Source of the DNA: Macrostomum lignano
Lineage: Eukaryota
DNA length: 64,000 nt
NCBI GenBank assembly: GCA_002269645.1
Contig: NIVC01001403.1
Location: forward strand, 124,001 to 188,000
Reading direction: 5' to 3'
The translations under genes were made by a program, and so were the position numbers. The notes under the pieces are model-generated. The model saw nothing but the letters and a program-made list of their open reading frames with translations. It ran no database searches and was not told the DNA's origin. Below, piece after piece: positions 37,776 to 57,900 of the stretch (position 1 is the stretch's first letter; each line of letters opens with the position of its first letter).

Positions 37776-40700
37776 ATGCAGCAGCATCAGCAGTCTGATG
37801 ACAGCTGCTTAGATGAAACAGACGATTCGCCTGCGGCTAACCGCCGCTCCACTGCCGCTAGTAGACGTAGCGGCGGCGCTGGCGGCAGCGAAAACATTGC
37901 TAGTGTCAACGCCGGTTCGACGCGCCGTCGTAGCAGTCGTCGCAGCGCTCTGCTACGTTGCGGTGGCAGCAGCGTCGATGGCGCAGCCGGCCCGGAGGCT
38001 GGCAGCTCCGCGTCCGCGACAACGTCGTGTTTGCGTCCTCAACGTCGGTTGCCTCAGCAGCTGGTGCCGCAGCCGCTGCCAGCGTCGCCTTCTCTGTCGG
38101 CGGCTTCGGCAGCATCGCCGGAGGAGCCCTCTGAGCAGGAGGATGTCGAAGACGAGGAGGCCGCGTCGGAGGCGTTCAGCGCCACGGCCAGCGTCAACGA
38201 AGCCGAAGCAGCGGAAGACGACGAGGATGGAGACAATGAGGAAGACGCCGATGAAGATCTCGACGAAGACTACGAGGCGGAGGAGGAAGAGGATGAAGAA
38301 GAGCAATCTGCTGGCGCTGTCACTTCTTATTCGCGTTCTCGGCGACGCCTGCCTGAGACTCGGCCGCCGTCGGCAGCATTGCCAGCTTCGACGGTGTCGG
38401 CTGATGGGTCGGCAACCGGCGGTGGAGCGCGGAGTCTCCGATTGCGCAGTCGACTACGACAGCTTCGCCGGGCCGGAACGAAGCGACGTTCCGGTTCCGC
38501 TGAGTCCGATGACGATTTGTCGTCTGCTGACAGGTGAAAATTTATTGTCTATGTGTATGTTTTAAACGAATAAGCATCAAACAACTTTCAATTGAGCCTT
38601 GACAACTTGGCACTTTTATTAGGCATGCACATGAAGCGTCTTTGAATTTTTATAGTGCATGCGCACTTTTAAAGTACAAGTGGTTTTGATGTTTTAGTAC
38701 TTTACCCGCACCCGTTAAGTACGTACTTGTACTTTAGTAGTTTTGAGTTTTCCATACCGCCTGTACTTTGCTGCTTGTTTATATTTGTAGTGTATACGAG
38801 TCAGCTGATCAGTCAGCCAGCCAACAGCAGCAGCAACAACTAGAACAAGATCAACAACATGAGCAGCAGCAGCAACAGCTTTGTTGCTTTTGCAATCTAT
38901 CAGATTGCAACACAACTTTTGGCCAAGGCGACATGACCAGATTCCGCTTGGCTTCAATGCCTAGCAGCAGCAGGCGGCTGCCGCAGCATCAGCAGGCGAT
39001 GGCGGACGATGACGTCGGCTGTCTGGATGTAATTCGACGCCGCCGCGACGGTCAGCCAGTCGATTCCGACAGGCCCGGCGTGCCGAACCCCTGGCTGGAC
39101 GCCGACGGCCGGCCCTACGGCCTGGTGCACGAGCTGGCCCGGATCGGGCACGCCGAGTTGCCAGACCTCTCCAGCCTTGCTGATCCCGACGGCGGCGCCT
39201 GGGCGCATCACTGCTGCGCCGCCTGGTCGCCGGAGGTTGTCATGAATGCCGCCGGTGAATTGGAGAACGTCGATAAAGCGCTTGGCAACAGTCTGTGGCA
39301 GCGGTGCGCCTTCTGCAAACGGCTGGGCGCCAGCATTCCCTGCTGCGCTGCTCGCTGCTCCAGGCGCTATCATTTTGTGTGCGCCGCGGCTGCCGGCTGC
39401 TTTCAGGTACTGTGTCTAATTGCTTCTGTCTAATTGCTTCTGTCTAATAGCTTCTGTCTAATTGCTTCTGTCTAATTTGCTTCTGTCTAATTGCTTCTGT
39501 CTAATTGCTTCTGTCTAATCTGCTTCTGTCTAATTGCTTCTGTCTAATTTGCTTCTGTCTAATTGCTTCTGTCTAATTGCTTCTGTCTAATTGCTTCTGT
39601 CTAATTGCTTCTGTCTAATTGCTTCTGTCTAATTGCTTCTGTCTAATTGCTTCTGTCTAATCTGCTTCTGTCTAATTGCTTCTGTCTAATTGCTCCTGTC
39701 TAATTTGCTCCTGTCTAATTGCTTCTGTCTAATTTGCTTCTGTCTAATTTGCTTCTGTCTAATTGCTTCTGTCTAATTTGCTTCTGTCTAATTTGCTCCT
39801 GTCTAATTTGCTTCTGTCTAATTTGCTCCTGTCTAATTTGCTTCTGTCTAATTTGCTCCTGTCTAATTTGCTTCTGTCTAATTTGCTCCTGTCTAATTTG
39901 CTTGTGTCTAATTTGCTTCTGTCTAATTTGCTTCTGTCTAATTTGCTTCTGTCTAATTTGCTTCTGTCTAATTGCTTCTGTCTAATTGCTTCTGTCTAAT
40001 TGCTTCTGTCTAATTGCTTCTGTCTAATCTGCTTCTGTCTAATTGCTTCTGTCTAATTGCTCCTGTCTAATTTGCTCCTGTCTAATTGCTTCTGTCTAAT
40101 TTGCTTCTGTCTAATTTGCTTCTGTCTAATTGCTTCTGTCTAATTTGCTTCTGTCTAATTTGCTCCTGTCTAATTTGCTTCTGTCTAATTTGCTCCTGTC
40201 TAATTTGCTTGTGTCTAATTTGCTTCTGTCTAATTTGCTTCTGTCTAATTTGCTCCTGTCTAATTTGCTTGTGTCTAATTTGCTTCTGTCTAATTTGCTT
40301 CTGTCTAATTTGCTCCTGTCTAATTTGCTTCTGTCTAATTGCTTCTGTCTAATTGCTTCTGTCTAATTGCTTCTGTCTAATTGCTTCTGTCTAATTTGTT
40401 TCTGTCTGCTTTTGTTTTCTTTTGTCTGTTTTTGTGGCAGTTTCTGTTTAAATTATGCTTTTCTCGTGTCTCCGTGTGCTTGTATCTGCTTGTGTTGCTC
40501 TATTGAGTTTCTGCTTGCCCTATTTAGCTGCATTATGCTATATTACCCCCGGCTCTCCTTTGTTCCGCAGGACTACAGCACGCTGCGCCTGTGGTGCTGG
40601 GACCACCTGGCCCTGGCGGACACATCGGACGAGCACGCCATGTGCTACGTGTGCGACAAGGCCCTGCCAGACCTGGCGGACCTACTCTACTGCACCGCCT

Positions 40701-43700
40701 GCGGTCAGCACTACCATGCCAGCTGCTTGGAGCCGCGCGTCACCCTCAGCCCCACAGTCCGGGTCGGCTGGCAGTGCCCCGACTGCAAGGCCTGCATTCA
40801 CTGCGGCGAAAATAAAAACGAAGAGAAATTATTAATATGCGACGTCTGCGATAAAGCATTTCATACTTACTGTCTGAGGCCCGCTATGCGCTGCATTCCT
40901 AGGAGCGGCTGGAAGTGCACCCGCTGCCGCGTCTGCTGGGACTGCGGCGCCAGGAGCCTCGGCATCGGCTCCGCGCCCTCCTCGCTATCATCGTCACCAA
41001 CGTCGAGTCGAGTTGCGGTCAGATGGCACGCCAACTATACTCAGTGCGACCGCTGCCATCACGCCGTTAGAACTAGACAGCAGCAGCACCAGCGACGGCC
41101 TTCCGCGTCGCCCACCCAGTCCGAGGCTTCCATGGCGTCGTCGACGCCTTCGACAGTCGGACCAGCGACTATTGCTGCTGCTGCTGCTGCTGCTGCTACT
41201 AACAGCAATACTACTAATAGCAGTAGTAATAACAGTTCGCTGTCGTCTCCGTCTAGGAAAAAGCGCCGAAGATTGTCCGCTGCGCCGCCAGTATCGCCGA
41301 CTCTAGCGGCGCCGACCATGCCGCCACCGCCTCCACCGCCGCCTCCGCCGCCTCCGTTATCTTCGTCGACCAGATCGGCATCCGGTTTCAGGACTAGCGG
41401 CACTACTAACAGCACCGCTAGTAGTAAGCATAGAAAATTGGCATCATCGGCTGCTGATACCGGGGACTCCGTGTTAGACAAAGACGATCATCCCATCACT
41501 GTGGTGGTCTGCCGCCAGCCAGACGAATCGTTCTTTTGCTCTCAAGACGTCTGCGTAGCCTGCGGTTCTATTGGCGACGGCCAGTCTCAGTCGCTGCTGT
41601 GCTGCTCCCAATGCGGCCAGTGCTATCACACTTTCTGCGCTGGCGTTTCCAAATTGGCGCAGGTGAACTTTTTATTCTTTAATTGCTTTTGTGTTGAGAT
41701 TTGACTACAGTTATTGTTGGATTCTTTCCAATATGTCTTCATTCAAACAAATCAGATCTCAGTGTTTCAATGTTTTCTTAGAAATCAGCGTTTCCGATGT
41801 TTCCTAGAAGTCAGGGTTCCTGATGCTTTCCTAGAAATCAGGGTTCCTGATGCTTTCCTAGAAATCAGCGTTCCTGATGTTTTCCTAGAAGTCAGGGTTC
41901 CCGATGTTTTCCTAGAAATCAGGGTTCTTGATGATTTCCTAGAAAACCTGCGTTTCCGATGCTTTCCTAGAAAACCTGCGTTTCCGATGTTTTCCTAGAA
42001 GTCAGGGTTCCCGATGTTTTCCTAGAAATCAGGGTTCTTGATGATTTCCTAGAAAACCTGCGTTTCCGATGCTTTCCTAGAAAACCTGCGTTTCCGATGT
42101 TTTCCTAGAAGTCAGGGTTCCCGATGTTTTCCTAGAAGTCAGGGTTCCCGATGTTTTCCTAGAAGTCGGGGTTCTTGATGATTTCTTAGAAATCAGGGTT
42201 TCCGATGCTTTCCTAGAAAACCAGCGTTTCTGATGTTTTCCTAGAAAACAGAGTTCTTCATGAATTCTTAGAAAACAAGGGTTTCCAATCCTTTCCTAGT
42301 AAATCTTAGAAAATCAAAGTCTCCAATGTTTTCTTAGAAAGTTAATGTTCTCTATGCTCCTTAAAAATCTATGTTCTTGAGAATAAGTGATCCCAATGAA
42401 CCCCGCAGAATAATCACTAGGAGCATATTCATATACAGCCAAATGAAATCAATCCCACACAATTCACTCCGCAGGTGATGGCCGACAAGGGCTGGCGGTG
42501 TTTCGACTGCACAGTGTGCGAAGGCTGCGGCAAGAGCAATCGCGAGTCTCTACTTTTGCTGTGCGACGACTGCGACATATCTTATCACACGTTCTGTCTG
42601 GACCCGCCGCTGACTGAGGTGCCCAAAGGCGCTTGGAAATGCCGGCACTGCGTTGTTTGCACCCTGTGCGGCAGCCGATCGCCAGGCTACAACTGCTCCT
42701 GGCAGCATAACTTCAGCCGCTGCGGCCCCTGCCACTCGCACTACGCCTGTCCGCTGTGCACCGCCCAGTACAGGGAGGGCGACCTTCTAGTGCACTGCGC
42801 CCAGTGCGAGCGCTGGTGCCACGCACTGTGCGACGGGTTAGCCAACGAAGCCGAAGCTGAATTAGCCACCGACCTTAATTATCTGTGCTATTATTGTCGG
42901 GGCCAGGTGCCGCTCCGGTTGCCGGGCGGTTGCCAGGCAGATCTGCCAGCATATTGCTCATCGGATAGCGGCAAACAGTTTTTCATGGACGGTGTTGTAC
43001 TGTCCGAGATCGGCATGCTGCTGGTTCGGGGTGCTATGCTCAAACTGCCAGCTAAAATGTCTGCTCAGCAGTTGCACCAGCAGCACATGCTGCAGCACCC
43101 TCATCATCAGCCTCCTCAGCAGCAACAAACCTCCCCAGCAGTAGAGTACTCCTCACCGATGCAGCCGCAGGATTCGAATAAATTGCGCAAACCAACTAAT
43201 TTAGGGGTTGGCGGATTTCGGCCAAGGCAGCAGAGGGGCCGTCAGCCGTCTCAGCTTCCCCTTCATCATTCGCATGATCAGCAGCAGCAGCAGCTTCATC
43301 AGCATCATTTTCACCGGCAGCAGTCTCTGCCAGGCGGCGTCTCTCAGCTTCAACAGCAGCTTCAGAGACCGCAGCAGCAGCAGCAATCGCTAATGCAACA
43401 GTTGCAACAGCCCAAACGGCGAGGTCCTCGCCGAAAAATTAGCGATATTGAGGAGAATTATCCCGAATATCTGATGGAGGCTTTCCTTGGCCGGCCAATT
43501 TTAACTGGGGCGAGAGCAGTTGCGGCTGGCGGACCCTCTGCTGCTTCCGGTTCCCAGGCTGCCGCTGCTGCGGCGTCGGCTGCCGCTCCTGGCTGTGCTT
43601 CCGGTTCCGCTTCCGGTGCTGCTGGCGTTGCCGCCCCAGCAGCCGGAAGCAGCCTGGCGGCCGCTGCTCTGACACCTGCTGCAGCATCGAATGCAGCTTT

Positions 43701-46700
43701 GTCGCCTGAGACAGCTCAGTCAGCCGCGGTCGCTTCAGTCTCCGGTGCTAAAACTGCCGACGATCCCGAAGCTGAAGACTCCGACGAGACCAGGTCGGTG
43801 GACGATCTGATGAGCATGCCAGCCATGGCGCCCGCAGGTCCCGCAGCTGCCGCTAACTCCGCCTCCGCTGCCGCCACCTCTGCCGCTACCGCCACCGTTT
43901 CCTCCTCGTCGGCCTCCGCCGCCGCTGCAGCCAAAGTTGACGATGCCGAAGCTGATCGGGACGATCTTGGCGACATCATCCCGGATGTTGTCGGCGTTGC
44001 AGGCGTTGGCGTTGTGGATGACGACGATGAGGACCTGCTGTTCACCATGCTGCGCGAGGACATGCGCAGCGTTGGCATTCGCAAATCCGACCTGCAGCCT
44101 TCGCAGCCGCCGCCTCCCCCGCCGCCTCAGCCGCCTTCGTCGGCTGCTTCAACTTCGGGTGCCGCTGCCGAGGACGATCTGGACATTGACAATCTGGATC
44201 CCAGCCTCACCCAGCTGTGCTGCGATCACACCACCGTGCAAGATGTTATCAAAGGCCTCGGCGGGCCGCTGCCACCTCCGCCGCCTCCATCCGCTCCTTT
44301 GTCGTTGCAGCCAGCTAGCAGTGGCGAGGACGCCGCGGCGGCCAAGCGTCGCATCAACACCCAGCGCTGGTTGGAAGACGAGAGCCTCGGCGATCGGGCC
44401 ACGGCCGCCTCGATTCTCTACGCCAATCAGCGAGCCCCGAACCTGCGGCAGGAGATGCCCAATAGCGAGGAGCGATGCCGGCACGTAAACAAGATGTGGC
44501 GCAAATTGCCAGCTGAGGAGCGGCACCAGTGGGTTGTGAGTGACGCTTTAGTTCTATGTGGATTAAACAGTCATATCGCCCACAGCACCCAATGAGAATC
44601 GCCCACAGACTCGAAAAAAAATCGCCCACAGACCCCAATGAGAATCGCCCACAGACCCCAATGAAAATCGCCCACAGACCCCAATGAGAATCGCCCACAG
44701 ACCCCAATGAGAATCGCCCACAGACCCCAATGAGAATCGCCCACAGACCCATTGAGAATCGCCCACAGACCCCAATGAGAATCGCCCACAGACCCCAATG
44801 AGAATCACCCACAGACCCATTGAGAATCGCCCACAGACCCCAATGAGAATCGCCCACAGACCCCAATGAGAATCGCCCACAGACCCATTGAGAATCGCCC
44901 ACAGACCCCAATGAGAATCGCCCACAGACCCCAATGAGAATCGCCCACAGACCCCATTGAGAATCGCCCACAGACCCCAATGAGAATCGCGCACAGACCC
45001 CATTGAGAATCGCCCACAGACCCCAATGAGAATCGCCCACAGACCCCAATGAGAATCGCCCACAGACCCTAATGAGAATCGCCCACAGACCCATTGAGAA
45101 TCGCCCACAGACCCCATTGAGAATCGCCCACAGACCCCATTGAGAATCGCCCACAGACCCAATGAGAATCGCCCACAGACCCAATCAGAATCGCCCACAG
45201 ATCCCAATCAGAAACGCCCACAGACCCCAATGAGAATCGCCCACAGACCCATTGAGAATCGCCCACAGACCCCAATGAGAATCGCCCACAGACCCAATGA
45301 GAATCGCCCACAAACCCCATTGAGAATCGCCCACAGACCCAATGAGAATCGCCCACAGACCCCAATGAGAATCGCCCACAAACCCCATTGAGAATCGCCC
45401 ACAGACCCCAATGAGAATCGCCCACAAACCCCATTGAGAATCGCCCACAGACCCCAATGAGAATCGCCCACAAACCCCATTGAGAATCGCCCACAGACCC
45501 CAATGAGAATCGCCCACAGACCCCATTGAGAATCGCCCACAAACCCCAATGAGAATCGCCCACAGACCCCAATGAGAATCGCCCACAGACCCCAATGAGA
45601 ATCACCCACAGACCCATTGAGAATCGCCCACAGACCCCAATGAGAATCGCGCACAGACCCCATTGAGAATCGCCCACAGACCCCAATGAGAATCGCCCAC
45701 AGACCCCAATGAGAATCGCCCACAGACCCCAATGAGAATCGCCCACAAACCCCATTGAGAATCGCCCACAGACCCAATGAGAATCGCCCACAAACCCCAT
45801 TGAGAATCGCCCACAGACCCCAATGAGAATCGCCCACAAACCCCATTGAGAATCGCCCACAGACCCCAATGAGAATCGCCCACAAACCCCATTGAGAATC
45901 GCCCACAGACCCCAATGAGAATCGCCCACAAACCCCAATGAGAATCGCCCACAGACCCAATGAGAATCGCCCACAGACCCCAATGAGAATCGCCCACAAA
46001 CCCCATTGAGAATCGCCCACAGACCCCAATGAGAATCGCCCACAGACCCCAATGAGAATCGCCCACAGACCCCAATGAGAATCGCCCACAAACCCCATTG
46101 AGAATCGCCCACAGACCCAATGAGAATCGCCCACAGACCCAATGAGAATCGCCCACAAACCCCAATGAGAATCGCCCACAGACCCCAATGAGAATCGCCC
46201 ACAAACCCCATTGAGAATCGCCCACAGACCCCAATGAGAATCGCCCACAAACCCCATTGAGAATCGCCCACAGACCCCAATGAGAATCGCCCACAAACCC
46301 CATTGAGAATCGCCCACAGACCCCAATGAGAATCGCCCACAAACCCCAATGAGAATCGCCCACAGACCCCAATGAGAATCGCCCACAGACCCCAATGAGA
46401 ATCGCCCACAAACCCCATTGAGAATCGCCCACAGACCCAATGAGAATCGCCCACAGACCCCATTGAGAATCGCCCACAAACCCCATTGAGAATCGCCCAC
46501 AGACCCCATTGAGAATCGCCCACAGACCCCAATGAGAATCGCCCACAAACCCCAATGAGAATCGCCCACAGACCCCAATGAGAATCGCCCACAGACCCCA
46601 ATGAGAATCGCCCACAAACCCCATTGAGAATCGCCCACAGACCCAATGAGAATCGCCCACAGACCCCATTGAGAATCGCCCACAGACCCAATGAGAATCG

Positions 46701-49700
46701 CCCACAGACCCCATTGAGAATCGCCCACAGACCCCAATGAGAATCGCCCACAGACCCCAATGAGAATCGCCCACAGACCCCAATGAGAATCGCCCACAGA
46801 CCCATTGAGAATCCTCTGCAAAATCGCTCTACTCTCTACATCTGCCCTGTGTTCAAACTGCATAAAATTGGCAAATTCCATCTGTAATTAACATTTTTCG
46901 CAGGTGATGGCTCGCGCGAATAAGTCGCAGCAGCAACAGCAACAACCTCAGCAGCAGCAGTCAAAGAAAGCCTCCGGCCCGTCGCTAATGGACAGCTCTT
47001 CCGCATCGGGCGCGCAGATTCCGCGCACGCCAACCTCTCTGTCGTCGTCTTCGTCGCCGCTGATGTCTTCTACGGTTTCGCCGACTGCCGCTCTCTATCA
47101 GCAGTCCAAGCAGGCTGGGGTATGCGGTCTGGCAGGGGATGAGACATAAGTGGCAATGGGAGAGGGGAGACGAGAGGAGATATAGAGAAGGGAGATGAGA
47201 CTGTGAAAGAATCACAGGATTGTGAGATATCGTGCATCAGTATCACGCCAGTGCATAATCGCCAACGCCAATATCCCTAATTCGCAGAGCGCAGACAGTT
47301 TTCGACAGTCGCCTGTCGACCAATCAAATAGCGAAGCTGAAAGTGCTGAAAAGCGTAACCAGGTACGCGATTTGATTGCTAGACAGTCGAAAGAGCGTCA
47401 AATACAAAGGACAATGCAAATTTCCGGGCCGCAACAGCAGCAAAGTCTGCAACAGCAACAGCAGCAGAGTCTGCAACAACAGCAGAGTCTGCAACAGCAA
47501 CAGCAGAGTCTGCAACAGCAACAGCAGAGTCTGCTACAGCAGCAGAGTTTGCAGCAGCAACAAAGTCTGCAACAGCAACAGCAGAGTCTGCAACAGCAGC
47601 AGAGTCTGCAACAACAACAGCAAAGTCTGCAACAGCAACAGCAGAATCTGCAGCAGCGGCAGCAGCAGAGTCTGCAACCACAGACTCAACAGCCCTGGTT
47701 AACTAGGCCATCACTGTCTCTTCGAATGCAATGCAGTAAGTAGAGCAAGCACAATCAGTACAATTTATTCAGATGCAGCGCAGCAGCAACTTTTTGGCAC
47801 CAACATTGTGTGTTATAACTTTTACATTTCCAGCGCCCGATGTGCCACCCGGAATGGCCACTGTACAGCTAGCTCACGGAAAATGGGCAAGCGTTCCTCA
47901 GGTAGGACTCGGCACCTAGTTAATGCATACTTAATTAAAGGTTTTCCTTGGTAATTCTAGTAGAAACTGTTGTGGCATTTTTTAATTTCAGTTGACGCGC
48001 CCAACATCGGCCGCCTCGTTTGGACCCTTGCTGCTTCAGCAGCAGCAGCAGCGCCAGCAATTCCATTTGACGCCTGCCCTGTATAGGTCGCCAACTGGTG
48101 CCCCGACTTCCTTCATCGCTCCGCAGCCTCCGCGACCTCCATCGCAATTCGCGTCTAGCTTTGCGTCGCCTGCATTGTCGGAGGCTCTGCTAAGAAGCGG
48201 CGCGCCTACGTCCATTACGCTGCAGCAGCCGCAACTTCAGCAACAACCGAATCAAGCCGCTGCAACATCTCTTGCTTACTCTAACTCGGCTTTACGGCCT
48301 GAGAATGCGTCTAGGATACAGGAAAACAGTATTAGCTCTCGTGTGATGAGTAATGAGCTGCAGATATGCACGCAAGCCACCGCCAGCGAAAGCGCTGTGA
48401 TAACTACAAAATCGACCTCTTCTCAAAGCAAAACAGAATTTAACAATAGCAATCGCGTTAATAACGACAAACCATTGGATGATGTTGCCTCGTTGACAAC
48501 TGCTAATAACTCTGGTGTGCAAAACTTCGCTGCTGAAACTTATAGTACCAATAAGAACCAGCAAGAAGTCGCAGCTTCGCTGCCTCAAAGCATCGAGAAT
48601 AGCAGTGGAAACTGTGGTTCGACTAATGAAACTGATGAAGCAACACAAATAAATCATCAAAACTGTGAGTCAGTTGAAAACAGCGGCTCAGATATGGAAG
48701 CTAATGATACACAAAGGCCTGCGTGTGAACCAGGAAGTGGAAACTGCGGCACAGATGATGAAGCTGATGATGCGCCAAAGCCTCGCTGTGAGCCAGGCAG
48801 TGGAAACTGCGGCACAGATGATGAAGCTGATGATGCGCGAAAGCCTCATTGTGAGCCAGGCAGTGGAAACTGCGGCACAGATGATGAAGCTGATGATGCG
48901 CCAAAGCCTCGCTGTGAGCCAGGCAGTGGAAACTGCGGCACAGATGATGAAGCTGATGATGCGCCAAAGCCTCGTTGTGAGCCAGGCAGTGGAAACTGCG
49001 GCACAGATGATGAAGCTGATGATGCGCCAAAGCCTCGCTGTGAGCCAGGCAGTGGAAACTGCGGCACAGATGATGAAGCTGATGATGCGCCAAAGCCTCG
49101 TTGTGAGCCAGGCAGTGGAAACTGCGGCACAGATGATGAAGCTGATGATGCCCCAAAGCCTCGTTGTGAGCCAGGCAGTGGAAACTGCGGCACAGATGAT
49201 GAAGCTGATGGAGCATCAACAAAGCCTCGCTGTAAACCAGGCAGTGGAAACTGCGGCACAGATGATGAAGCTGATGGAGCATCAACAAAGCCTCGCTGTG
49301 AACCAGGCAGTGGAAACTGCGGCACAGATGATGAGGCTGATTGCAATGCTACTTCAAGGCCTTCGGTATGCAAACCTGGTAGTGGAAACTGCGGCACAGA
49401 TGATGAAATGGAGGAAGGTGAAACACCGAAATCAGAAACGTGTGAGGCAGCTCAGTCGCAGTCTGATATAGCTGCGGAAGTTAAGAATGCCGGGAGCTCA
49501 AAGTCCTCTAGTTGTGCTCCAGGTAGTGGCAACTGCGGCACGGATGATAAAGAAGATCAAACTAAGACTTCCGATCTTGAAGAATACCCTTCTGGTACTA
49601 CAAACTGCTACACTTTAGATAAGTCAGAAGAAAAGGGTAGCATATCATCGAAGGCTGAGAAAGAAACTGACACTCGGAACTCTGATAATGTCGATCTTGA

Positions 49701-51899
49701 ATATTCGAACAAATTAGAAGGCAAAACTGGCAGACCAAACTGCAACTCGAACAACGCTGCAGTGACAGATCACGCAGCAGACAATGTTAATTGCAAGTCC
49801 AGCGAGGAGAACAACGGCCCGAGCGGTATGGACACTTCAGAGGTGCCTACGTCAGTCGCTGCCGCAGCGGACGTGGCAATGTCAGAAACAGCTACAATGC
49901 TAGCGTCATCTACTCAGGGTACTACTGTTAATAAGTCGACCTCCTTAGCTTCCAAAGATGCAGCAGTCAGCAGCAGCAATGAATCGCAGTCTGTTTCTCC
50001 TAATCAATCAGAGACTTCTGCAGCATCTCAGCCGCCTCAGCGCTGCTCGCCGCCTTTGTCCTCCGCCGCTGTGCTTACTGGACAAATGCGACAGCTATTA
50101 ACCAACGTAGACTCCAAAGATGAATCCGCAACCGCAACCACCGTAGTGACCTCGTCGGCCCTTGAAAAGCAACCGGACCGTCAGAAGTCTGTTGAAGAGT
50201 CCAAGTCTGCCACGCCTTCGCAACAAGAGGAGCAAAAACAGAAAGAATCGACAGAATCAGTATCGCAGCCTCAGCTGCCCAGCAGTCTTGATGACGTCAT
50301 TTCAAGCGTGATAGCGGACTCCAGCAACTATAAGGCGCCGCCAGCTGCTACTGCAGCTTCGTCAGCTTCATCTGCATCCGTTGCTCCGCCGCCCCAACAG
50401 CGCCAGGGCCTATTTCCTATATCCGCTGAGGATGTTGAAATGCTTCTTGGCAATGAGCTGCCCGCTAAACCGCAGCCTCAACCGCCGCAGCCTCAACCGC
50501 CGCAGCCTCAACCGCTGCAGCCTCAACCGCCGCAGCCTCTGCAGCAGCAACGTCCAACTCTTCAGCAGCAGCCGCCGCCACCGCAGCCGCCACCGCAGCC
50601 GCCACCGCCACCGCCACCGCAATCTCCCGCCGGCTTCGTCATCTCTCCGCATCCTCCGCAGCATCAGCCGCAGCCGCCGTCCCACTTTTATTACGGCGGC
50701 CAGTGGCGCAGCCCCGCAATGCGACCTCCGCCAGCCATGCCGCAGCCTGAGCAGCAGCAGCATCAACATCAGAACTATCAGCGGCTGGAACTTGAAGCCC
50801 AGCTAAAGAATGTTGAAGAGAAACTGGCGTCGAATAGAAAACTTAAAAAGAATTTAAACGCTAAAGGACGAACGGTGAGTGATTTCTGCAAGATTTTCTT
50901 CATGATTTGGATAACAGTTAAAATTTAGAATAAATGATGAGAGAATTAAGATTTTGCGACTACCAAATCTCAGGTGTAAGATTTCGCATAGGAATTACCA
51001 AATCTTAGGGGTGAGATTTCGCATAGGTATAATCAAATCTCAGGGGTGAGATTTACCAAAGAGATTACCAAATCTCAGGGATGAGATTTACCAAAGGGAT
51101 TACCAAATCTCAGGGGTGAGATTTCGCACCGGGATTAACAATCTAAGGGAGTGAGATTTCGCACCGGGATTAACAATCTAAGGGAGTGAGATTTCGCACC
51201 GGGATTAACGATCTAAGGGAGTGAGATTTCGCACCGGGATTAACAATCTAAGGGGTGAGATTTCGCACCGGGACTAACAATCTAAGGGGTGAGATTTCGC
51301 ACCGGGACTAACAATCTAAGGGGTGAGATTTCGCACCGGGAATAACAATCTAAGGGGTGAGATTTCGCACCGGGACTAACAATCTAAGGGGTGAGATTTC
51401 GCACCGGGACTAACAATCTAAGGGGTGAGATTTTGAATTTGCACCGGGACTAACAATCTAAGGGGTGAGATTTCGCACCGGGACTAACAATCTAAGGGGT
51501 GAGATTTGGCATAGGGATTACCAAATCTCAGAGGTGAGATTTCGCATCGGGATGATAAAATAAATTTGCCGGCCTCCGCATTCCGCAGGCCAAGAAGAAC
51601 AACATTCCGCTCAGTCGGCAAGACCAAATCGAGGCTCAGCAAGTCGGCGAAGAGATCAAACGATTAAGCCAGGAGTCGGACAACCTGCGAGCTCGCCTAA
51701 AAGATTGCGGCTCTGGCAGCGCCGGCGCCAGCCAGTGGCCGGCCGGGTCCAGCAGGGCGCCAATGTCGGCGCCGCCGCTCCCTCAACCTCAGCAGCAGCA
51801 GCAGCAGCCTCTTCTGCGCTTCCATCCTCAGCACCAGCCGCAGATTATGGCCGGCGATAATAATCCTTTTAGCGAAGCTTTCCAACGTCAATTGGTGCA

Positions 51900-51935
<36 letters not shown>

Positions 51936-54900
51936 CCCTGACAGTAGCAAAGATGGACATTCGATGCTTCGTCCAGGATTTCAGCAGCTTCCAGAGCAGC
52001 AGCAACAGCAATTTGCTGCACCTCGCCTAGTAGTTCAGGGGCCGCCGCCGCCGCCGCCGGGCTTCCACCGCCAGGTGTCCTATCCATCCGGCTACATGGT
52101 GGCGCCTCAGTCGGCAGCTGAGCACCAGCAGCACCTGCACCAGTCACCGCATCTTCATCCGCACTTTCACCGGCCTCCGTTGCCACCGCCGCCGCCGCCT
52201 CCTGCGCCACCTCAGTTTCAGCACAATCAGCAGCAGCCCCAGTTGCTGCACTTTCAGCCACCAGCTCAAAGAGCTTTCCAGCAGCAGCAGCAGATGCAAC
52301 ACCATCAGGCTGTGCGAGGTGAGATTCTGGAGTGGCTAAATCTCTGGGATGAGATTCTAGAGTGGCTAGATCTCTGGGGTGAGATTCTGGAGTGGCTAGA
52401 TCTCTGGGTGAGGTTATAGAATGGATAATTCTCTGGGGTGAGATTCTAGAGTAGATAATTCTCTGGGGTGAGATTCTAGAGTGGCCAAATCTCTAGGGTG
52501 AGATTCTAAAGTGTATAATTCTCTGGGTTGAGATTCTAGAGTGGCTAAATCTCTAGGGTGAGATTCTAGGAGTGGCTAAATCTCTGGGATGAGATTCTAG
52601 AGTGGCTAGATCTCTGGGGTGAGATTCTGGAGTGGCTAGATCTCTGGGTGAGGTTATAGAATGGATAATTCTCTGGGGTGAGATTCTAGAGTAGATAATT
52701 CTCTGGGGTGAGATTCTAGAGTGGCCAAATCTCTAGGGTGAGATTCTAAAGTGTATAATTCTCTGGGTTGAGATTCTAGAGTGGCTAAATCTCTAGGGTG
52801 AGATTCTAGGAGTGGATAATTCTCTGGGGTGAGATTATGGAGTGGCGAGATCTCTGGGACGAGATTCTAGAGGGAATAGCTCAGTCTAGACTTATCGCAC
52901 TCTGATTCCCACAAAAGTTTCTGCATCTCGCATTCTCTCGCCCCTCATCTCTACCCGCATTCGCTTGCCGCAGCCGATTTTGAGCAGCCAAGGTCAGTCG
53001 GCCTTCTGCCCCAACATCAGCCATCGTCAGTGTCCATCAGCGTGGCAGCCACCGTCGGCGGCCATGTCGCTACGACAACGACGACAAACAGCGGGCAACC
53101 GCTGTCCGCTGCATCTGCCGACTCCGCCGATGCCGCCGCTTCAACTGCGGCGCCAATGTCCGACGAGAGCATCGGCAAGCTCAACGACACCTTCGACACT
53201 GTGCTGAGAAATGCTTCGGCAGCTGCCGAGGTCGGTGGCGGTGTCGGCGCATCGACTGCCTACCTGGCCGATCCGTCCAAAGCCGACGTGCTGGACAAAT
53301 TCCATCGCCAAAATCTTGCCGGCGGCGCGACGTCGCCTTCGTCAAAGAAAAAGCGTACCAGCGCCGGCGGCAAAGCGGCGACGCCGTCGACTCCGACGCC
53401 GCCTCTGTCGCTGTCCGCGTCGATGCCGTTAGGTGAAAATGGCTCGGCCGTCTACGACAGCTTGAAGCAGCGCCTGGCTGAACAGCGATTGGCTGGGCCA
53501 ATGCGAACTTTGCTGCAGGATCCGAAGGTTTGAGATGAGCAGTGGCGCCTACTGCTGTAGCGCTGGGGACTGAGGGGTTTGTAGCTTCAGTGGCTGAAGG
53601 GTTTGTAGCTTCAATGGCTGAAGGGTTTGTAGCTTCAGTGGCTGAAGGGTTTGTAGCTTCAATGGCTGAAGGGTTTGTAGCTTCAGTGGCTGAAGGGTTT
53701 GTAGCTTCAGTGGCTGAAGAGTTTGTGGCTTCAGTGGCTGACGGGTTTGTAGCTTCAGTGGCTGAAGGGTTTGTAGCTTCAGTGGCTGAAGGGATTTGTA
53801 GCTTCAGTGGCTGAAGGGTTTGTAGCTTCAGTGGCTGAAGGGTTTTCTAGCTTCAGTGGCTGAAGGGTTTGTAGCTTCAGTGGCGGATCTTTTAGCTTCA
53901 GAAACTAAAAACGTTTAACTCCACTGGCTCCTCCACCTTATACCAACCTACCAACCTCGCAATGGCTCCTAAATCCTCATCGCCAATACTGTTGCAACAG
54001 GTGTACACAGACCTGCGCCTTCTGTTGCCACCCGGAACCGGGTCTCTTGGCGCCTTCTTTGCCAGGCCTGACGGTTCAGTGGGGCGATATCGCTCCCAGG
54101 CGTCCCAGCCGGGAGGCGTCGAGCTGGGCCGATACAGCCTCAAACCGTACAGCTGTTCGAGGCATCCTTCTCATAAATTGCTGCTGGCCAACATCCCGGA
54201 TGTTCTGACCAGCTCCGTGCCTCAACCAGCCGATGAATTGATAGCTCCGGTTCAGACTCGCAGCGAGCTGCTGTTACCTCTCGGCGATTCTTGCGGATCC
54301 GAATCCAGTTTCCCGTGCGCCGTTGCGGTGCCGCCGGATTTCGGCGAAGACACAGACGACGCCGCTGAACAGATGGTTGAACGGCTGTTGGAATCTCTGG
54401 AGCCCGAGGCGGAGCCCGAGTCGCCTAGGGCTGGCACACCTCAGCTGCCCGGCTTCTGCTCCGGTGAGCTCTGCTTTGGGATTAAAAATCGCCTCTGATA
54501 ATCCCTCTGAACTGCTTCCTGTAATCTCTCTGAACTGCTTCCTGTAATCTCTCTGAACTGCTTCCTGTAATCTCTCTGAACTGCTTCCGGTAATCTCTCT
54601 GAACTGCTTCCTGTAATCTCTCTGAACTGCTTCCTGTAATCTCTCTGAACTGCTTCCGGTAATCCCTCTGAACTGCTTCCGTAATCCCTCCTGAACTGCC
54701 TCTGATATCTCTCCTGAACTTTCTCTGATAATCTTCCTGAACTTTCTTTGGTAATCCCTCCTAAACTTTCTCTGGTAATCCCTCCTAAACTTTCTCTGGT
54801 AATCCCTCCTGAAATTTCTCTGATAATCCCTCCTGAACTTTCTCTGATATCTCCTGAACTTTCTCTGATAATCCTCCTGAACTTTCTCTGATAATCCTCC

Positions 54901-57900
54901 TGAACTTTCTCTCTGGTAATCCTGAACTTTCTCTGGTAATCCTCCTGAACTTTCTCTGGTAATCCTGAACTTTCTCTGATAATCTCTCCTGAAATTTCTC
55001 TGATAATCCCTTCTGAAATTTCTCTGGTATCCCTCCTGAACTTTCTCTGATAATCTCTCCTGAAATTTCTCTGATAATCCCTCCTGAAATTTCTCTGATA
55101 TCCCTCCTGAACTTTCTCTGATAATCCCTCCTGAACTTTCTCTGATAATCTCTCCTGAAATTTCTCTGATATCCCTCCTGAACTTTCTCTGATAATCCCT
55201 CCTGAAATTTCTCTGATAATCCCTCCTGAACTTTCTCTGATATCTCCTGAACTTTCTCTGATAATCCTCCTGAACTTTCTCTGATATCTCCTGAACTTTC
55301 TCTGATAATCCTCCTGAACTTTCTCTCTGGTAATCCTGAACTTTCTCTGGTAATCCTCCTGAACTTTCTCTGGTAATCCTGAACTTTCTCTGGTAATCCT
55401 CCTGAACTTTCTCTGGTAATCCTGAACTTTCTCTGATAATCTCTCCTGAAATTTCTCTGATAATCTCTCCTGAAATTTCTCTGATAATCCCTCCTGAAAT
55501 TTCTCTGGTAATCCTCCTGAACTTTCTCTGGTAATCCCCCTGAACTTTCTCTGATAATCTCTCCTGAAATTTCTCTGGTAATCCCCCTGAAATTTCTCTG
55601 GTAATCCCTCCTGAACTTTCTCTGATAATCCCTCCTGAAATTTCTCTGATAATCCCTCCTGAACCTTCTCTGATATCTCCTGAACTTTCTCTGATATCTC
55701 CTGAACTTTCTCTGATAATCCTCCTGAACTTTCTCTCTGGTAATCCTAAAATTTCTCTGATAATCTCTCCTGAAATTTCTCTGATAATCCCTCCTGAAAT
55801 TTCTCTGGTAATCCTCCTGAACTTTCTCTGGTAATCCTGAACTTTCTCTGGTAATCCTCCTGAACTTTCTCTGGTAATCCTGAACTTTCTCTGATAATCT
55901 CTCCTGAAATTTCTCTGATAATTTCTCCTGAAATTTCTCTGATAATCCCTCCTGAAATTTCTCTGGTAATCCTCCTGAACTTTCTCTGGTAATCCCCCTG
56001 AACTTTCTCTGATAATCTCTCCTGAAATTTCTCTGATATCCCTCCTGAACGTTCTCTGATAATCCCTCCTGGAATTTCTCTGATAATCCCTCCTGAAATT
56101 TCTCTGATATCCCTCCTGAACTTTCTCTGATAATCCCTCCTGAACTTTCTCTGATAATCTCTCCTGAAATTTCTCTGATATCCCTCCTGAACTTTCTCTG
56201 ATAATCCCTCCTGAAATTTCTCTGATAATCCCTCCTGAACTTTCTCTGATATCTCCTGAACTTTCTCTGATAATCCTCCTGAACTTTCTCTGATATCTCC
56301 TGAACTTTCTCTGATAATCCTCCTGAACTTTCTCTCTGGTAATCCTGAACTTTCTCTGGTAATCCTCCTGAACTTTCTCTGGTAATCCTGAACTTTCTCT
56401 GGTAATCCTCCTGAACTTTCTCTGGTAATCCTGAACTTTCTCTGATAATCTCTCCTGAAATTTCTCTGATAATCTCTCCTGAAATTTCTCTGATAATCCC
56501 TCCTGAAATTTCTCTGGTAATCCTCCTGAACTTTCTCTGGTAATCCCCCCTGAACTTTCTCTAATAATCTCTCCTGAAATTTCTCTGGTAATCCCCCCTG
56601 AAATTTCTCTGGTAATCCCTCCTGAACTTTCTCTGATAATCCCTCCTGAAATTTCTCTGATAATCCCTCCTGAACCTTCTCTGATATCTCCTGAACTTTC
56701 TCTGATATCTCCTGAACTTTCTCTGATAATCCTCCTGAACTTTCTCTCTGGTAATCCTAAAATTTCTCTGATAATCTCTCCTGAAATTTCTCTGATAATC
56801 CCTCCTGAAATTTCTCTGGTAATCCTCCTGAACTTTCTCTGGTAATCCTGAACTTTCTCTGGTAATCCTCCTGAACTTTCTCTGGTAATCCTGAACTTTC
56901 TCTGATAATCTCTCCTGAAATTTCTCTGATAATCTCTCCTGAAATTTCTCTGATAATCCCTCCTGAAATTTCTCTGGTAATCCTCCTGAACTTTCTCTGG
57001 TAATCCCCCCTGAACTTTCTCTGATAATCTCTCCTGAAATTTCTCTGATATCCCTCCTGAACGTTCTCTGATAATCCCTCCTGGAATTTCTCTGATAATC
57101 CCTCCTGAACCTTCTCTGATATCTCCTGAACTTTCTCTGATAATCCTCCTGAACTTTCTCTGATATCTCCTGAACTTTCTCTGATAATCCTCCTGAACTT
57201 TCTCTCTGGTAATCCTGAACTTTCTCTGGTAATCCTCCTGAACTTTCTCTGGTAATCCTGAACTTTCTCTGGTAATCCTCCTGAACTTTCTCTGGTAATC
57301 CTGAACTTTCTCTGATAATCTCTCCTGAAATTTCTCTGATAATCTCTCCTGAAATTTCTCTGATAATCCCTCCTGAAATTTCTCTGGTAATCCTCCTGAA
57401 CTTTCTCTGGTAATCCCCCTGAACTTTCTCTGATAATCTCTCCTGAAATTTCTCTGGTAATCCCCCCTGAAATTTCTCTGGTAATCCCTCCTGAACTTTC
57501 TCTGATAATCCCTCCTGAAATTTCTCTGATAATCCCTCCTGAACCTTCTCTGATATCTCCTGAACTTTCTCTGATATCTCCTGAACTTTCTCTGATAATC
57601 CTCCTGAACTTTCTCTCTGGTAATCCTAAAATTTCTCTGATAATCCCTCCTGAAATTTCTCTGGTAATCCTCCTGAACTTTCTCTGGTAATCCTGAACTT
57701 TCTCTGGTAATCCTCCTGAACTTTCTCTGGTAATCCTGAACTTTCTCTGATAATCCCTCCTGAACTTTCTCTGATAATCTCTCCTGAAATTTCTCTGATA
57801 TCCCTCCTGAACTTTCTCTGATAATCCCTCCTGAAATTTCTCTGATAATCCCTCCTGAACTTTCTCTGATATCTCCTGAACTTTCTCTGATAATCCTCCT

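What the first reader, a model, noticed from the sequence alone, without database searches (positions are those of the whole stretch)
48601..49620. Novel 12-copy Cys-pair acidic repeat (CxPGSGNCGTDD) inside KMT2C/D
Seen: 7 near-identical 21-aa units, 2 of 22 aa, and 3 diverged copies that keep CxPGSGNCGTDD while the spacers change, plus relics (SSGNCGS before, PSGTTNC after). Conservation of the core with drifting spacers, and frame-preserving length changes, suggest protein-level constraint. I know no such C-x6-C repeat in MLL3/4/trr proteins (human KMT2D has an unrelated Pro-rich repeat). Inference: a metal-binding or redox-sensitive, histone-binding acidic module in a chromatin enzyme, or an exonised minisatellite.
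Basis: partly seen in the sequence, partly recalled or inferred. Interest (0 to 1): 0.75.

Follow-up and report, generated by a model that had tools for sequence, protein, structure and literature searches.

The report
Conserved Cys-pair "CGT" repeat in KMT2C/D
A flatworm chromatin-enzyme gene (KMT2C/D) carries 12 in-frame copies of a short two-cysteine motif that is under selection and also fills, in spiders, ticks, a ribbon worm and a limpet, the stretch of the cell-cycle regulator HCF where other animals have protease cutting sites, so it may be an unrecognised protein-processing signal.

Summary
There are 12 exact C-x-PGSGNCGTDD cores at 48724-49548: seven 21-aa units, two of 22 aa and three diverged copies. 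They lie in frame in a 978-codon open frame, 3.4 kb downstream of exons encoding a KMT2C/D PHD cluster and HMG box. The source is probably Macrostomum lignano. All codon variation in the 11 fixed core positions is synonymous, while the spacers of copies 10-12 have diverged beyond alignment, so the core is under selection.

The motif is not unique to this gene. An exhaustive profile search found the shared core (C-x2-G-x2-3-C-G-T) in tandem arrays in about 19 protein clusters. These include HCF of a nemertean (11 core residues identical) and three spiders, XK-related scramblase tails, and several uncharacterised low-complexity proteins. Tick and limpet HCF genes carry variants.

In HCF the arrays sit between the same landmarks that bracket two canonical Taspase1 sites in leech HCF. 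HCFs with arrays have no Taspase1 site. My leading but unproven reading is a repeated processing or recognition signal. Metal binding and a phospho/O-GlcNAc site array remain live rivals. Similarity to the vertebrate HCF-1PRO repeat is not statistically detectable.

The parts
48724..49164 (+). Seven near-identical 63-nt (21-aa) units, CEPGSGNCGTDDEADDAPKPR. Copies 3 and 5 are identical, and so are copies 4 and 6, which indicates a recent 126-nt two-unit duplication.
49165..49296 (+). Two 66-nt (22-aa) units, C[EK]PGSGNCGTDDEADGASTKPR.
49297..49368 (+). Copy 10 (24 aa). The core is intact (35/36 nt); the spacer has diverged (ADCNATSRPSV).
49369..49512 (+). Copy 11. The core CKPGSGNCGTDDE carries three synonymous changes (TGC, CCT, GGT) and is followed by a 35-aa unrelated spacer.
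49513..49575 (+). Copy 12. The core CAPGSGNCGTDD carries three synonymous changes (GGT, GGC, ACG); the tail has diverged (KEDQTKTSD).
48601..48621 (+). Upstream relic half-motif SSGNCGS.
49588..49608 (+). Downstream relic PSGTTNC. Further degenerate Asn-Cys remnants have their Cys codons at 48664, 49741 and 49792.
47992..50928 (+). The 978-codon open frame (large exon) holding the array. It is flanked by Q-rich and P-rich low-complexity coding sequence. The true splice boundaries were not determined.
   Evidence: its flanks are identical to the M. lignano gene model P0002
42478..42909 (+). PHD fingers of the second KMT2C/D PHD cluster.
   Evidence: KMT2D 9yl3_K E 4e-49; KMT2C 6mlc E 6.9e-22; Pfam PHD
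44338..44535 (+). HMG box of the KMT2C type. It is the last recognisable domain before the array.
   Evidence: 2yuk, MLL3 homolog, E 5.8e-11, query residues 622-687
40631..40939 (+). Tandem PHD fingers.
   Evidence: MLL3 2ysm E 1.5e-34; KMT2D 9atn E 1.1e-27
39176..39403 (+). Extended-PHD (zf-HC5HC2H) segment.
   Evidence: PF13832, 5.6e-12; KMT2D 9yl3_K, 4.1e-12

Best explanation
The segment is a translated, in-frame tandem array of a short, intrinsically disordered linear motif. Its shared core is C-x2-G-x(2-3)-C-G-T; here it reads C-x-P-G-S-G-N-C-G-T-D-D-E with an acidic tail and a K-P-R lead-in. It lies in the linker just downstream of the PHD-HMG reader module of a flatworm KMT2C/D.

Shown:
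- The array expands and contracts like the many minisatellites of this genome, but the core is held by purifying selection.
- The core belongs to an old motif family shared with the central region of protostome HCF proteins.

Inferred mechanism: each unit is a recognition and cleavage site for a site-specific maturation activity. That activity could be a protease, or an enzyme such as OGT or a Taspase1-like hydrolase acting around the invariant Cys-Gly-Thr. The precursor would then be cut between the N-terminal reader part and the C-terminal catalytic part, as HCF and MLL1/Trx are. This is the same place where flies (from established knowledge) and planarians (PMC6128892) encode KMT2C/D as two genes.

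The enzyme, the scissile bond and cleavage itself are not shown.
For: 1. Selection. Seven of 7 variant codons in the 11 fixed core positions are synonymous (expected fraction 0.21; P about 1e-4). The cores of copies 10-12 are retained next to unalignable spacers.
2. Cross-phylum identity. Lineus longissimus HCF has 15 units of CLPGSGNCGTDDE, with 11 contiguous residues identical to the window's core.
3. A rare, specific family. The profile search gave only 19 representatives among 1.84 billion proteins. They include spider HCFs, XK-related scramblase C-terminal tails and three or more families of large low-complexity proteins. Tick HCF has at least 17 units of CTDGVHCGTPEP. Lottia HCF has about 11 units of GDCGTPHGCPGDG.
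4. Positional equivalence. In Lineus and spider HCF the array lies between the landmarks KQxxVIAAP and LATLATAAIS. In leech HCF the same interval holds two canonical Taspase1 sites, IPQFD|GTCDDDD and IPQFD|GMGDDDD, and no array.
5. Mutual exclusivity. HCFs with arrays have no Q[FILVM]DG site.
6. Multi-copy cleavage sites in the central region are the hallmark of vertebrate HCF-1, and invertebrate HCF is cut by Taspase1 (PMC4549301, PMC4840301). MLL1, MLL2 and dHCF are the bona fide Taspase1 substrates (PMC8410044).
7. The prime-side G-T-D-D-E resembles the acidic prime side of the leech sites (G-T-C-D-D-D).
8. AlphaFold2 gives pLDDT 50 with no secondary structure, as expected for a linear motif. 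There are no Pfam hits.
9. The array follows the HMG box. Planarians encode the N-terminal and C-terminal parts as separate LPT and trr genes (PMC6128892).
Against: - No cleavage has been observed in any of these proteins, and no RNA or peptide evidence exists for this exon.
- The position equivalent to the Taspase1 P1 Asp is Cys, and the IxQ[LV]D non-prime side is absent. The key Glu10 of the HCF-1PRO repeat is Gly.
- The unit HMM scores the human HCF-1PRO consensus at -0.9 bits, rank 7037 of 20001 against shuffles. The profile finds nothing in the PDB at E<=10. The link to known cleavage repeats is therefore positional, not sequence-based.
- Only one Taspase1-bearing invertebrate HCF (leech) was examined here.
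- Two conserved Cys in an intracellular disordered region are also a classic signature of metal binding.
- The invariant Thr sits in kinase consensus contexts: T-D-D-E (CK2 type) or T-P.
- Several carrier proteins (families B and C, P0003, P0006, P0008, P0012) are unidentified.
- Whether the gene continues into a SET domain lies outside the window.
Confidence: 0.4

Rival explanations
1. Metal-binding beads. The paired cysteines of adjacent units chelate Zn2+, or Cu or Cd. In arthropods and molluscs the His and Asp of the core would add ligands. This would turn a disordered acidic linker into a string of small metal knots with a structural, redox-sensing or buffering role.
For: Two invariant Cys per 12-24-aa unit occur in intracellular proteins (HCF, KMT2C/D, XKR cytoplasmic tail), where disulfides are unlikely. 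A C-x-D-G-x-H-C heptad with Cys, Asp, His and Cys is seen in spiders, ticks and Pomacea. A conserved Gly could make a knuckle-like turn. AF2 without metal would also call such a peptide disordered.
Against: The flatworm/nemertean version replaces both extra ligands (D to P, H to N) yet keeps C...C-G-T, so four-ligand binding within one unit cannot be the conserved function. The invariant Gly-Thr after the second Cys is unexplained. In Lottia the half-motifs are rearranged and the Cys spacing alternates between 5 and 12 residues. There is no match to any Pfam zinc-finger or knuckle model or to any PDB chain.
Confidence: 0.22
2. A multisite modification or docking array without cleavage. The invariant Thr would be phosphorylated (T-D-D-E and T-D-S-E-D-E fit CK2; T-P fits proline-directed kinases) or O-GlcNAcylated. 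The repeated marks would recruit a partner multivalently, like the CK2-phosphorylated acidic S-D-T-D repeats of MDC1 or the S-T-D-E sites of XRCC1 (from established knowledge).
For: Thr is invariant across all variants. It is always followed by an acidic run or by Pro. The motif is disordered and multicopy. HCF is a major OGT partner and O-GlcNAc substrate (PMC4549301).
Against: This does not explain the two invariant Cys and the Gly. The +1 to +3 context differs between lineages (DDE, DSE, PEP, PPP, PHG), so no single kinase consensus is conserved. It does not by itself explain why arrays and Taspase1 sites alternate at the same HCF position.
Confidence: 0.22
3. A functionally neutral in-frame minisatellite. 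This extremely repeat-prone genome expanded a 63-bp unit inside a tolerant low-complexity exon, and the sequence has no specific role.
For: 44% of the window is minisatellite. Simple and tandem repeats make up 15% of the M. lignano genome (PMC5730564). Copies 2-7 are 95-100% identical at the DNA level and show a two-unit higher-order duplication, so the expansion is recent. Neighbouring coding microsatellites (Q-rich, P-rich) lie in the same exon.
Against: Core variation is synonymous only, while old copies have saturated spacers. The 11-residue core is identical in a nemertean HCF, and the shared core occurs in chelicerates and molluscs. Neutral DNA cannot retain this across phyla.
Confidence: 0.05
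4. The array is not in the mature protein. It would be removed as a cryptic or alternative intron, or the open frame would not belong to the KMT2C/D transcript.
For: No transcript or peptide data were available. The only public model (P0002) is frame-scrambled across the array. All three forward frames are open across the repeats.
Against: Frame-preserving indels and synonymous-only core changes imply translation in this frame. The open frame continues for 245 codons before and 440 codons after the array. Related arrays sit in annotated HCF coding sequences and in a Tara Oceans metatranscriptome protein (P0014, source merc, ERR1711972).
Confidence: 0.06

Closest known systems
HCF-1PRO repeats of vertebrate HCF-1, cleaved by OGT at C9|E10
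   Same: Both are tandem multicopy units of about 20-26 aa in the central region of HCF, between the Kelch/ST-rich part and the acidic/Fn3 part. Both have two Cys 4-6 residues apart, with the second Cys followed two residues later by Thr and then by acidic residues (V-C-x4-C-E-T-H-E against V-C-x5/6-C-G-T-D-D-E). Both are disordered linear motifs.
   Different: The essential Glu10 is Gly here. The Thr-rich OGT-TPR-binding half (T14-T24) is replaced by an acidic tail or by Pro. There is no statistical sequence similarity (-0.9 bits, no better than shuffles; no PDB hit). In the window the host is KMT2C/D, not HCF. The literature states that HCF-1PRO is vertebrate-only with no related cellular sequence (PMC4840301).
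Taspase1 cleavage sites (IxQ[LV]D|G, acidic prime side) in MLL1/MLL2/Trx, TFIIA and invertebrate HCF
   Same: The host protein families are the same (HCF and a KMT2 methyltransferase). The position in HCF is the same as the two leech sites. The prime side G-T-D-D-E is like the leech G-T-C-D-D-D.
   Different: P1 is Cys, not Asp, and there is no I-x-Q-[LV] non-prime side. There are many tandem copies rather than one or two. No canonical Taspase1 site occurs on the + strand of this window or in array-bearing HCFs.
CK2-type acidic phospho-repeats (MDC1 S-D-T-D repeats, XRCC1/XRCC4 S-T-D-E sites; from established knowledge)
   Same: Both are multicopy acidic linear motifs with an invariant Thr followed by D/E in a chromatin protein, and both are disordered.
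   Different: Those repeats have no conserved Cys pair or Gly. The tick, Lottia and family-C variants here have T-P rather than an acidic context.
Drosophila Lpt/Trr and planarian LPT/trr-1/trr-2 (KMT2C/D encoded as two genes)
   Same: The array lies just after the PHD-HMG module, which is roughly where those lineages separate the N-terminal reader protein from the C-terminal SET protein (PMC6128892; the Drosophila part is from established knowledge).
   Different: In those lineages the separation is genetic. Here it would be post-translational, and that is only inferred. Whether this gene continues into FYRN/FYRC/SET lies outside the window.
Low-complexity repeats of vertebrate KMT2D (Pro-rich and poly-Q tracts)
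   Same: Both are in-frame coding repeats in disordered linkers of KMT2C/D. Q-rich (47431-47693) and P-rich (50470-50621) tracts also occur in this exon.
   Different: Those are compositional repeats without a fixed motif. This one has an 11-residue invariant core conserved across phyla.

Membership tests
KMT2C/D (MLL3/4, Lpt+Trr) gene | N-terminal PHD clusters including an extended PHD | tested here: met
   Pfam PHD and zf-HC5HC2H_2. Best PDB matches are MLL3 2ysm at 1.5e-34 and KMT2D 9yl3 at 4e-49 and 4.1e-12.
KMT2C/D (MLL3/4, Lpt+Trr) gene | HMG box after the second PHD cluster | tested here: met
   Window 44338-44535 matches the MLL3 HMG box 2yuk, E 5.8e-11.
KMT2C/D (MLL3/4, Lpt+Trr) gene | C-terminal ePHD-FYRN-FYRC-SET module in the same transcript | not testable with these tools
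   The downstream exons in the window have no Pfam hits. The gene runs off the window, so it could be full-length or Lpt-like.
Protostome 'CGT' Cys-pair repeat (family delineated here) | Core C-x2-G-x(2-3)-C-G-T | tested here: met
   The invariant columns of alignment A1 are C, G, C, T, D, E, with the Gly after the second Cys at least 90% conserved. All 12 window copies fit.
Protostome 'CGT' Cys-pair repeat (family delineated here) | Tandem array of 12-24-aa units in a disordered, low-complexity region of an intracellular protein | tested here: met
   AF2 gives pLDDT 50 with no secondary structure.
Protostome 'CGT' Cys-pair repeat (family delineated here) | Significant profile match to the other members | tested here: met
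   phmmer of the exon against Lineus HCF gives 1.6e-101 and against Pomacea P0003 gives 1.5e-24. These values are inflated by repetition, but a single unit shares 11 contiguous identical residues.
HCF-1PRO repeat | Glu at the cleavage position (C9|E10), essential for OGT-mediated cleavage | tested here: not met
   The residue after the second Cys is Gly in all 12 copies and in the relatives, rarely Ser. The requirement is taken from PMC4840301.
HCF-1PRO repeat | Thr-rich region (T14-T24) that binds the OGT TPR domain | tested here: not met
   The tail is acidic (DDEADDA), or PEP/PPP in relatives.
HCF-1PRO repeat | Detectable sequence similarity to the 26-aa consensus | tested here: not met
   -0.9 bits, rank 7037 of 20001 against shuffles. 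No PDB chain at E<=10.
HCF-1PRO repeat | Located in the central region of HCF | tested here: inconclusive
   Not met for the window, whose host is KMT2C/D. Met for the relatives in Lineus, spider, tick and Lottia HCF.
Taspase1 cleavage site | Asp at P1 within IxQ[LV]D|G | tested here: not met
   P1 is Cys and P2/P3 are N/G (H/I in spiders). No Q[FILVM]DG occurs on the + strand of the window.
Taspase1 cleavage site | Gly at P1' followed by an acidic prime side (G-x-D-D) | tested here: met
   G-T-D-D-E in 11 of 12 copies and G-T-D-D-K in copy 12. Compare the leech G-T-C-D-D-D.
Taspase1 cleavage site | Actual cleavage by Taspase1 | not testable with these tools
   Needs an enzyme assay.
Zinc finger / zinc knuckle domains | Match to a curated Zn-binding domain model, or four ligands at canonical spacing | tested here: not met
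   0 Pfam families at E<=1. There are only two Cys per unit in the flatworm version.

The most novel reading that the evidence does not exclude
The C-x2-G-x2-3-C-G-T repeat would be a third, previously unrecognised class of site-specific maturation signal for HCF and KMT2-type chromatin regulators in protostomes, alongside Taspase1 sites and OGT-cleaved HCF-1PRO repeats. The Macrostomum KMT2C/D would then be split post-translationally at the place where flies and planarians split the gene. The motif could also be the missing 'related cellular sequence' bearing on the unexplained origin of HCF-1PRO repeats.
Probability: 0.3. Interest if true: 0.85.

Novelty: new variant of a known kind. Interest (0 to 1): 0.7.

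Why it matters
HCF proteolytic maturation is conserved in function, but its mechanism differs: OGT in vertebrates, Taspase1 in flies. The origin of the vertebrate HCF-1PRO repeat is an open question. Kapuria et al. 2016 (PMC4840301) invoked a viral origin because no related cellular sequence was known.

This work turned up a conserved multicopy Cys-pair motif at the same HCF position in chelicerates, a nemertean and a limpet. The same motif recurs in a KMT2C/D and in XK-related scramblase tails. That gives a concrete, testable candidate for a further processing or recognition signal.

For KMT2C/D it suggests that separating the PHD-HMG reader part from the catalytic part may be achieved in three ways: as one polypeptide, as two genes, or by cleavage.

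Even if the motif proves to be a metal-binding or phospho-docking module, it is a strongly conserved and apparently unannotated linear motif. It has no Pfam model, and the literature searches found nothing on it. It occurs in central chromatin regulators.

Tried and rejected
1. Pfam on the array exon and on carrier proteins gave no domain.
2. The profile of the repeat against the PDB gave nothing at E<=10. phmmer of carrier families B, C and E against the PDB gave nothing either, so these families stay unidentified.
3. The word-indexed homologue search with the repeat profile returned only one 68-aa fragment. This is a sensitivity artefact; the exhaustive HMMER search was needed.
4. The HCF Fn3 query meant to collect full-length HCFs returned only short fragments. 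I rescued it by fetching their genomic loci. The oyster locus L001 and the cockroach locus L005 did not reach the central region and were uninformative.
5. Exact-product look-ups for P0001, P0002 and P0003 found no contig. I therefore have no DNA for the Lineus or Pomacea arrays and no second M. lignano copy.
6. Sequence homology to HCF-1PRO is rejected as unsupported.
7. The idea that the motif is a caspase site (VCDD|G, ECTD|G in arthropods) is rejected as a general explanation, because the Asp is Pro in the flatworm and nemertean version.
8. Intein-like Asn-Cys chemistry is not conserved: the residue before the second Cys is N, H or D in different lineages.
9. Capotosti 2007 (PMC2168920) is not held, so the exact Drosophila HCF site could not be quoted.
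Full report
**The observation.** The window region 48400-49900 was read and translated. In the frame of a 978-codon open frame (47992-50928, + strand) there are 12 exact matches to C.PGSGNCGTDD, starting at 48724 and ending at 49548. Their spacing gives seven 21-aa units, two 22-aa units, then units of 24 and 48 aa and a last copy. Tandem Repeats Finder reports period 63, 11.3 copies and 92% matches. The relics SSGNCGS (48601-48621) and PSGTTNC (49588-49608) are present. The 284-aa array has a net charge of about -45 and 26 cysteines.

**Is it more than chance?** Repetition itself is ordinary in this window. About 30 minisatellite arrays cover 44% of it, mostly in what look like introns. The likely source genome, Macrostomum lignano, is 15% simple and tandem repeats (PMC5730564). 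The source is inferred from the flanks of the exon, which are identical to a UniRef M. lignano model, P0002.

Copies 2-7 are 95-100% identical at the DNA level. Copies 3 and 5 are identical, as are 4 and 6, so part of the array expanded recently through a two-unit duplication.

The conservation pattern is what is not ordinary.
- Copies 10-12 keep 31-35 of 36 core nucleotides, while the next 27 nt keep only 10-12, which is unalignable.
- In the 11 fixed core codons, all seven variant codons are synonymous (TGC, CCT, GGA, GGT twice, GGC, ACG). Only 21 of the 99 possible single-base changes would be synonymous, so P is about 1e-4 for six independent events.
- All length differences preserve the frame.

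The core is therefore under purifying selection at the protein level.

**The host gene.** Same-strand exons upstream encode four recognisable modules.
- An extended PHD at 39176-39403 (Pfam PF13832, 5.6e-12; KMT2D 9yl3, 4.1e-12).
- A PHD tandem at 40631-40939 (MLL3 2ysm, 1.5e-34; KMT2D 9atn, 1.1e-27).
- Further PHD fingers at 42478-42909 (KMT2D 9yl3, 4e-49; KMT2C 6mlc, 6.9e-22).
- An HMG box at 44338-44535 (MLL3 2yuk, 5.8e-11).

This is the N-terminal architecture of KMT2C/D. The array begins about 4.2 kb downstream of the HMG box. A 2.2-kb 23-bp minisatellite (presumably intronic) and Q-rich coding sequence lie in between. The SET end of the gene, if it is in the same transcript, lies outside the window.

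**Relatives elsewhere.** This is the main new result. A homologue search with the exon returned four proteins.
- 'Host cell factor 1-like' of the nemertean Lineus longissimus (P0001) has 15 units of CLPGSGNCGTDDE[ED]E, with 11 contiguous residues identical to the window's core.
- An uncharacterised Pomacea canaliculata protein (P0003) has 26 units of C[SD]DGIHCGTDDEEE.
- A spider HCF (P0004) has 7 units. It shares a cluster with Parasteatoda tepidariorum HCF.
- P0002 is the frame-scrambled M. lignano model that covers the window itself.

An alignment of double units (A1) has invariant C, G, C, T, D, E columns, with the Gly after the second Cys at least 90% conserved. The core shared across all variants is C-x2-G-x(2-3)-C-G-T.

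An exhaustive HMMER search of 1.84 billion cluster representatives found only 19 proteins at E<=0.001. They group as follows.
- HCF of the spiders Caerostris and Trichonephila.
- Two XK-related proteins with the array in the C-terminal cytoplasmic tail (Pfam PF09815).
- Family B, Q-rich, with C-x-DGIHCGTDSEDE.
- Family C, P/M/Q-rich, with ECTDG[IK]HCGTPPP.
- A protein with CSDGIHCGSENGD, and several singletons.
- One Tara Oceans metatranscriptome fragment (P0014), which shows that such arrays are transcribed.

None of these proteins matches a Pfam model in the array region.

**HCF loci.** I fetched genomic loci around HCF Fn3 fragments.
- Tick (Rhipicephalus appendiculatus): at least 17 tandem 12-aa units, CTDGVHCGTPEP, inside the Kelch-bearing HCF gene.
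- Limpet (Lottia gigantea): about 11 units of ATGDCGTPHGCPGDGxETQ. The CGT and CPGDG halves are both present but rearranged.
- Leech (Helobdella robusta): no array. Instead there are two canonical Taspase1 sites, IPQFD|GTCDDDD and IPQFD|GMGDDDD.

Two conserved landmarks, KQxxVIAAP and LATLATAAIS, bracket the array in Lineus HCF (residues 701, 887-1163, 1294) and in Trichonephila HCF (702, 1012-1122, 1234). The same landmarks bracket the Taspase1 sites in the leech (nt 7584, 8636 and 8729, 9565). None of the array-bearing HCFs has a Q[FILVM]DG site, and neither does the + strand of the window. At one homologous position, HCF therefore carries either Taspase1 sites or CGT arrays. In vertebrates it carries HCF-1PRO repeats (PMC4549301, PMC4840301).

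**What it most likely is.**

*Shown.* The segment is a translated-frame array under selection. It is predicted to be disordered (AlphaFold2 pLDDT 50, no secondary structure). It consists of an old linear motif shared with HCF and a few other intracellular proteins.

*Inferred.* It is a repeated recognition or processing signal. The argument has three parts.
1. In HCF, the one carrier whose biology is known, the motif occupies the proteolytic-maturation position, in mutual exclusion with Taspase1 sites.
2. Like the vertebrate HCF-1PRO sites, it comes in tandem multicopy form.
3. The other identifiable carriers belong to families that are matured by site-specific cleavage in model organisms. KMT2-family MLL1, MLL2 and Trx are cut by Taspase1 (PMC8410044). 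XKR scramblase tails are cut by caspases (from established knowledge).

In KMT2C/D the array follows the PHD-HMG module. That is about where Drosophila (Lpt/Trr, from established knowledge) and planarians (LPT, trr-1, trr-2; PMC6128892) encode the protein as two genes. I put this reading at about 0.4.

**What speaks against it, and the rivals.**
- The motif fails the defining features of both known cleavage signals. It has Gly where HCF-1PRO needs Glu10 and lacks the Thr-rich OGT-binding half. It has Cys where Taspase1 needs Asp at P1.
- A unit HMM scores the human HCF-1PRO consensus at -0.9 bits, no better than shuffles (rank 7037 of 20001). The repeat profile finds nothing in the PDB. The relation to HCF-1PRO is therefore positional and functional analogy only, not demonstrated homology.
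- *Metal binding by the Cys pairs (about 0.22)* is plausible on first principles. However, the candidate extra ligands Asp and His of the arthropod/mollusc version are both replaced in the flatworm/nemertean version. The invariant Gly-Thr is left unexplained.
- *A modification or docking array on the invariant Thr (about 0.22)* fits CK2-type T-D-D-E or proline-directed T-P contexts. It does not explain the cysteines.
- *A neutral minisatellite (about 0.05)* is contradicted.
- *Removal by splicing (about 0.06)* cannot be excluded without RNA data but is hard to reconcile with synonymous-only variation.

**Novelty.** Full-text searches found no description of such a repeat. The HCF literature states that HCF-1PRO repeats are vertebrate-only, that invertebrate HCF is cut by Taspase1, and that no related cellular sequence is known (PMC4840301, PMC4549301). 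Pfam has no model for it.

The public M. lignano model (P0002) reads most of the array in the wrong frame (ETAAQMMKLMM..., identical to the +1-frame ORF at 48665-49471). This hides the motif from protein databases. I rate the finding as a new variant of a known kind, namely a repeated maturation or recognition motif in HCF- and KMT2-type regulators, with the mechanism unproven. Interest is 0.7.

Noticed in passing
window 1-64000 (e.g. 1-1437, 25208-27430, 44575-46813, 54493-62070): About 30 distinct minisatellite arrays with periods of 4-71 bp cover 44% of the window, including a 7.6-kb array of 24/71-bp units. They fill the presumed introns of the KMT2C/D gene. Long ORFs on both strands inside them (e.g. 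45069-46881 on the minus strand) are repeat artefacts.
   Followed up: partly
window 48665-49471 (+1 frame) and protein P0002: The public M. lignano gene model (UniRef, named 'Protein kinase domain-containing protein') translates most of the array out of frame and switches frame repeatedly. This looks like indel errors in the older assembly, and it hides the motif from protein databases.
   Followed up: partly
window 47431-47693 and 50470-50621: Two further coding repeats lie close to the array: a Q-rich QQQQSL repeat (periods 21/39/117) in the upstream coding ORF 47222-47743, and a P/Q-rich PQPQPP microsatellite (periods 6-21) in the array's own exon.
   Followed up: no
window 48850-49101: Copies 3 and 5 are identical over 63 nt, and so are copies 4 and 6. 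They alternate CGC and CGT at the last codon, which points to a recent duplication of a 126-bp two-unit block.
   Followed up: yes
L003 6136-6860 (Rhipicephalus appendiculatus HCF locus): Tick HCF carries at least 17 tandem copies of a minimal 12-aa unit, CTDGVHCGTPEP. The array changes reading frame near 6660, which is either an assembly indel or a small intron.
   Followed up: partly
L002 8223-9467 (Lottia gigantea HCF locus): Limpet HCF has about 11 copies of ATGDCGTPHGCPGDGxETQ. The 'CGT' and 'CPG[DS]G' halves of the motif are present but in a different order and spacing. The JGI annotation splits this HCF gene into three models.
   Followed up: partly
L004 8588-9118 (Helobdella robusta HCF locus): Leech HCF has two canonical Taspase1 sites (IPQFD|GTCDDDD and IPQFD|GMGDDDD) in an acidic stretch, at the position where the other protostome HCFs examined (nemertean, spiders, tick, limpet) have the Cys-pair array.
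   Followed up: yes
proteins P0015 (array ~489-560 of 746 aa) and P0017 (~435-520 of 728 aa): Two XK-related (scramblase family) proteins from unnamed ENA assemblies carry 3-5 copies of C-D-D-G-[VL]-H-C-G-T-D-D-E in their long C-terminal cytoplasmic tails.
   Followed up: partly
proteins P0016, P0018, P0020 and P0007, P0009, P0013: Two unidentified families of very large low-complexity proteins carry 7-23 copies of variants of the motif: ECTDG[IK]HCGTPPP and C-x-DGIHCGTDSEDE. They have no Pfam or PDB match, and their source taxa are unknown.
   Followed up: partly
window 52318-52872: A 30-bp minisatellite starts inside the end of the open frame 51763-52419 and adds an EILEWL[ND]LW repeat to its translation. 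This probably marks the exon-intron boundary.
   Followed up: no
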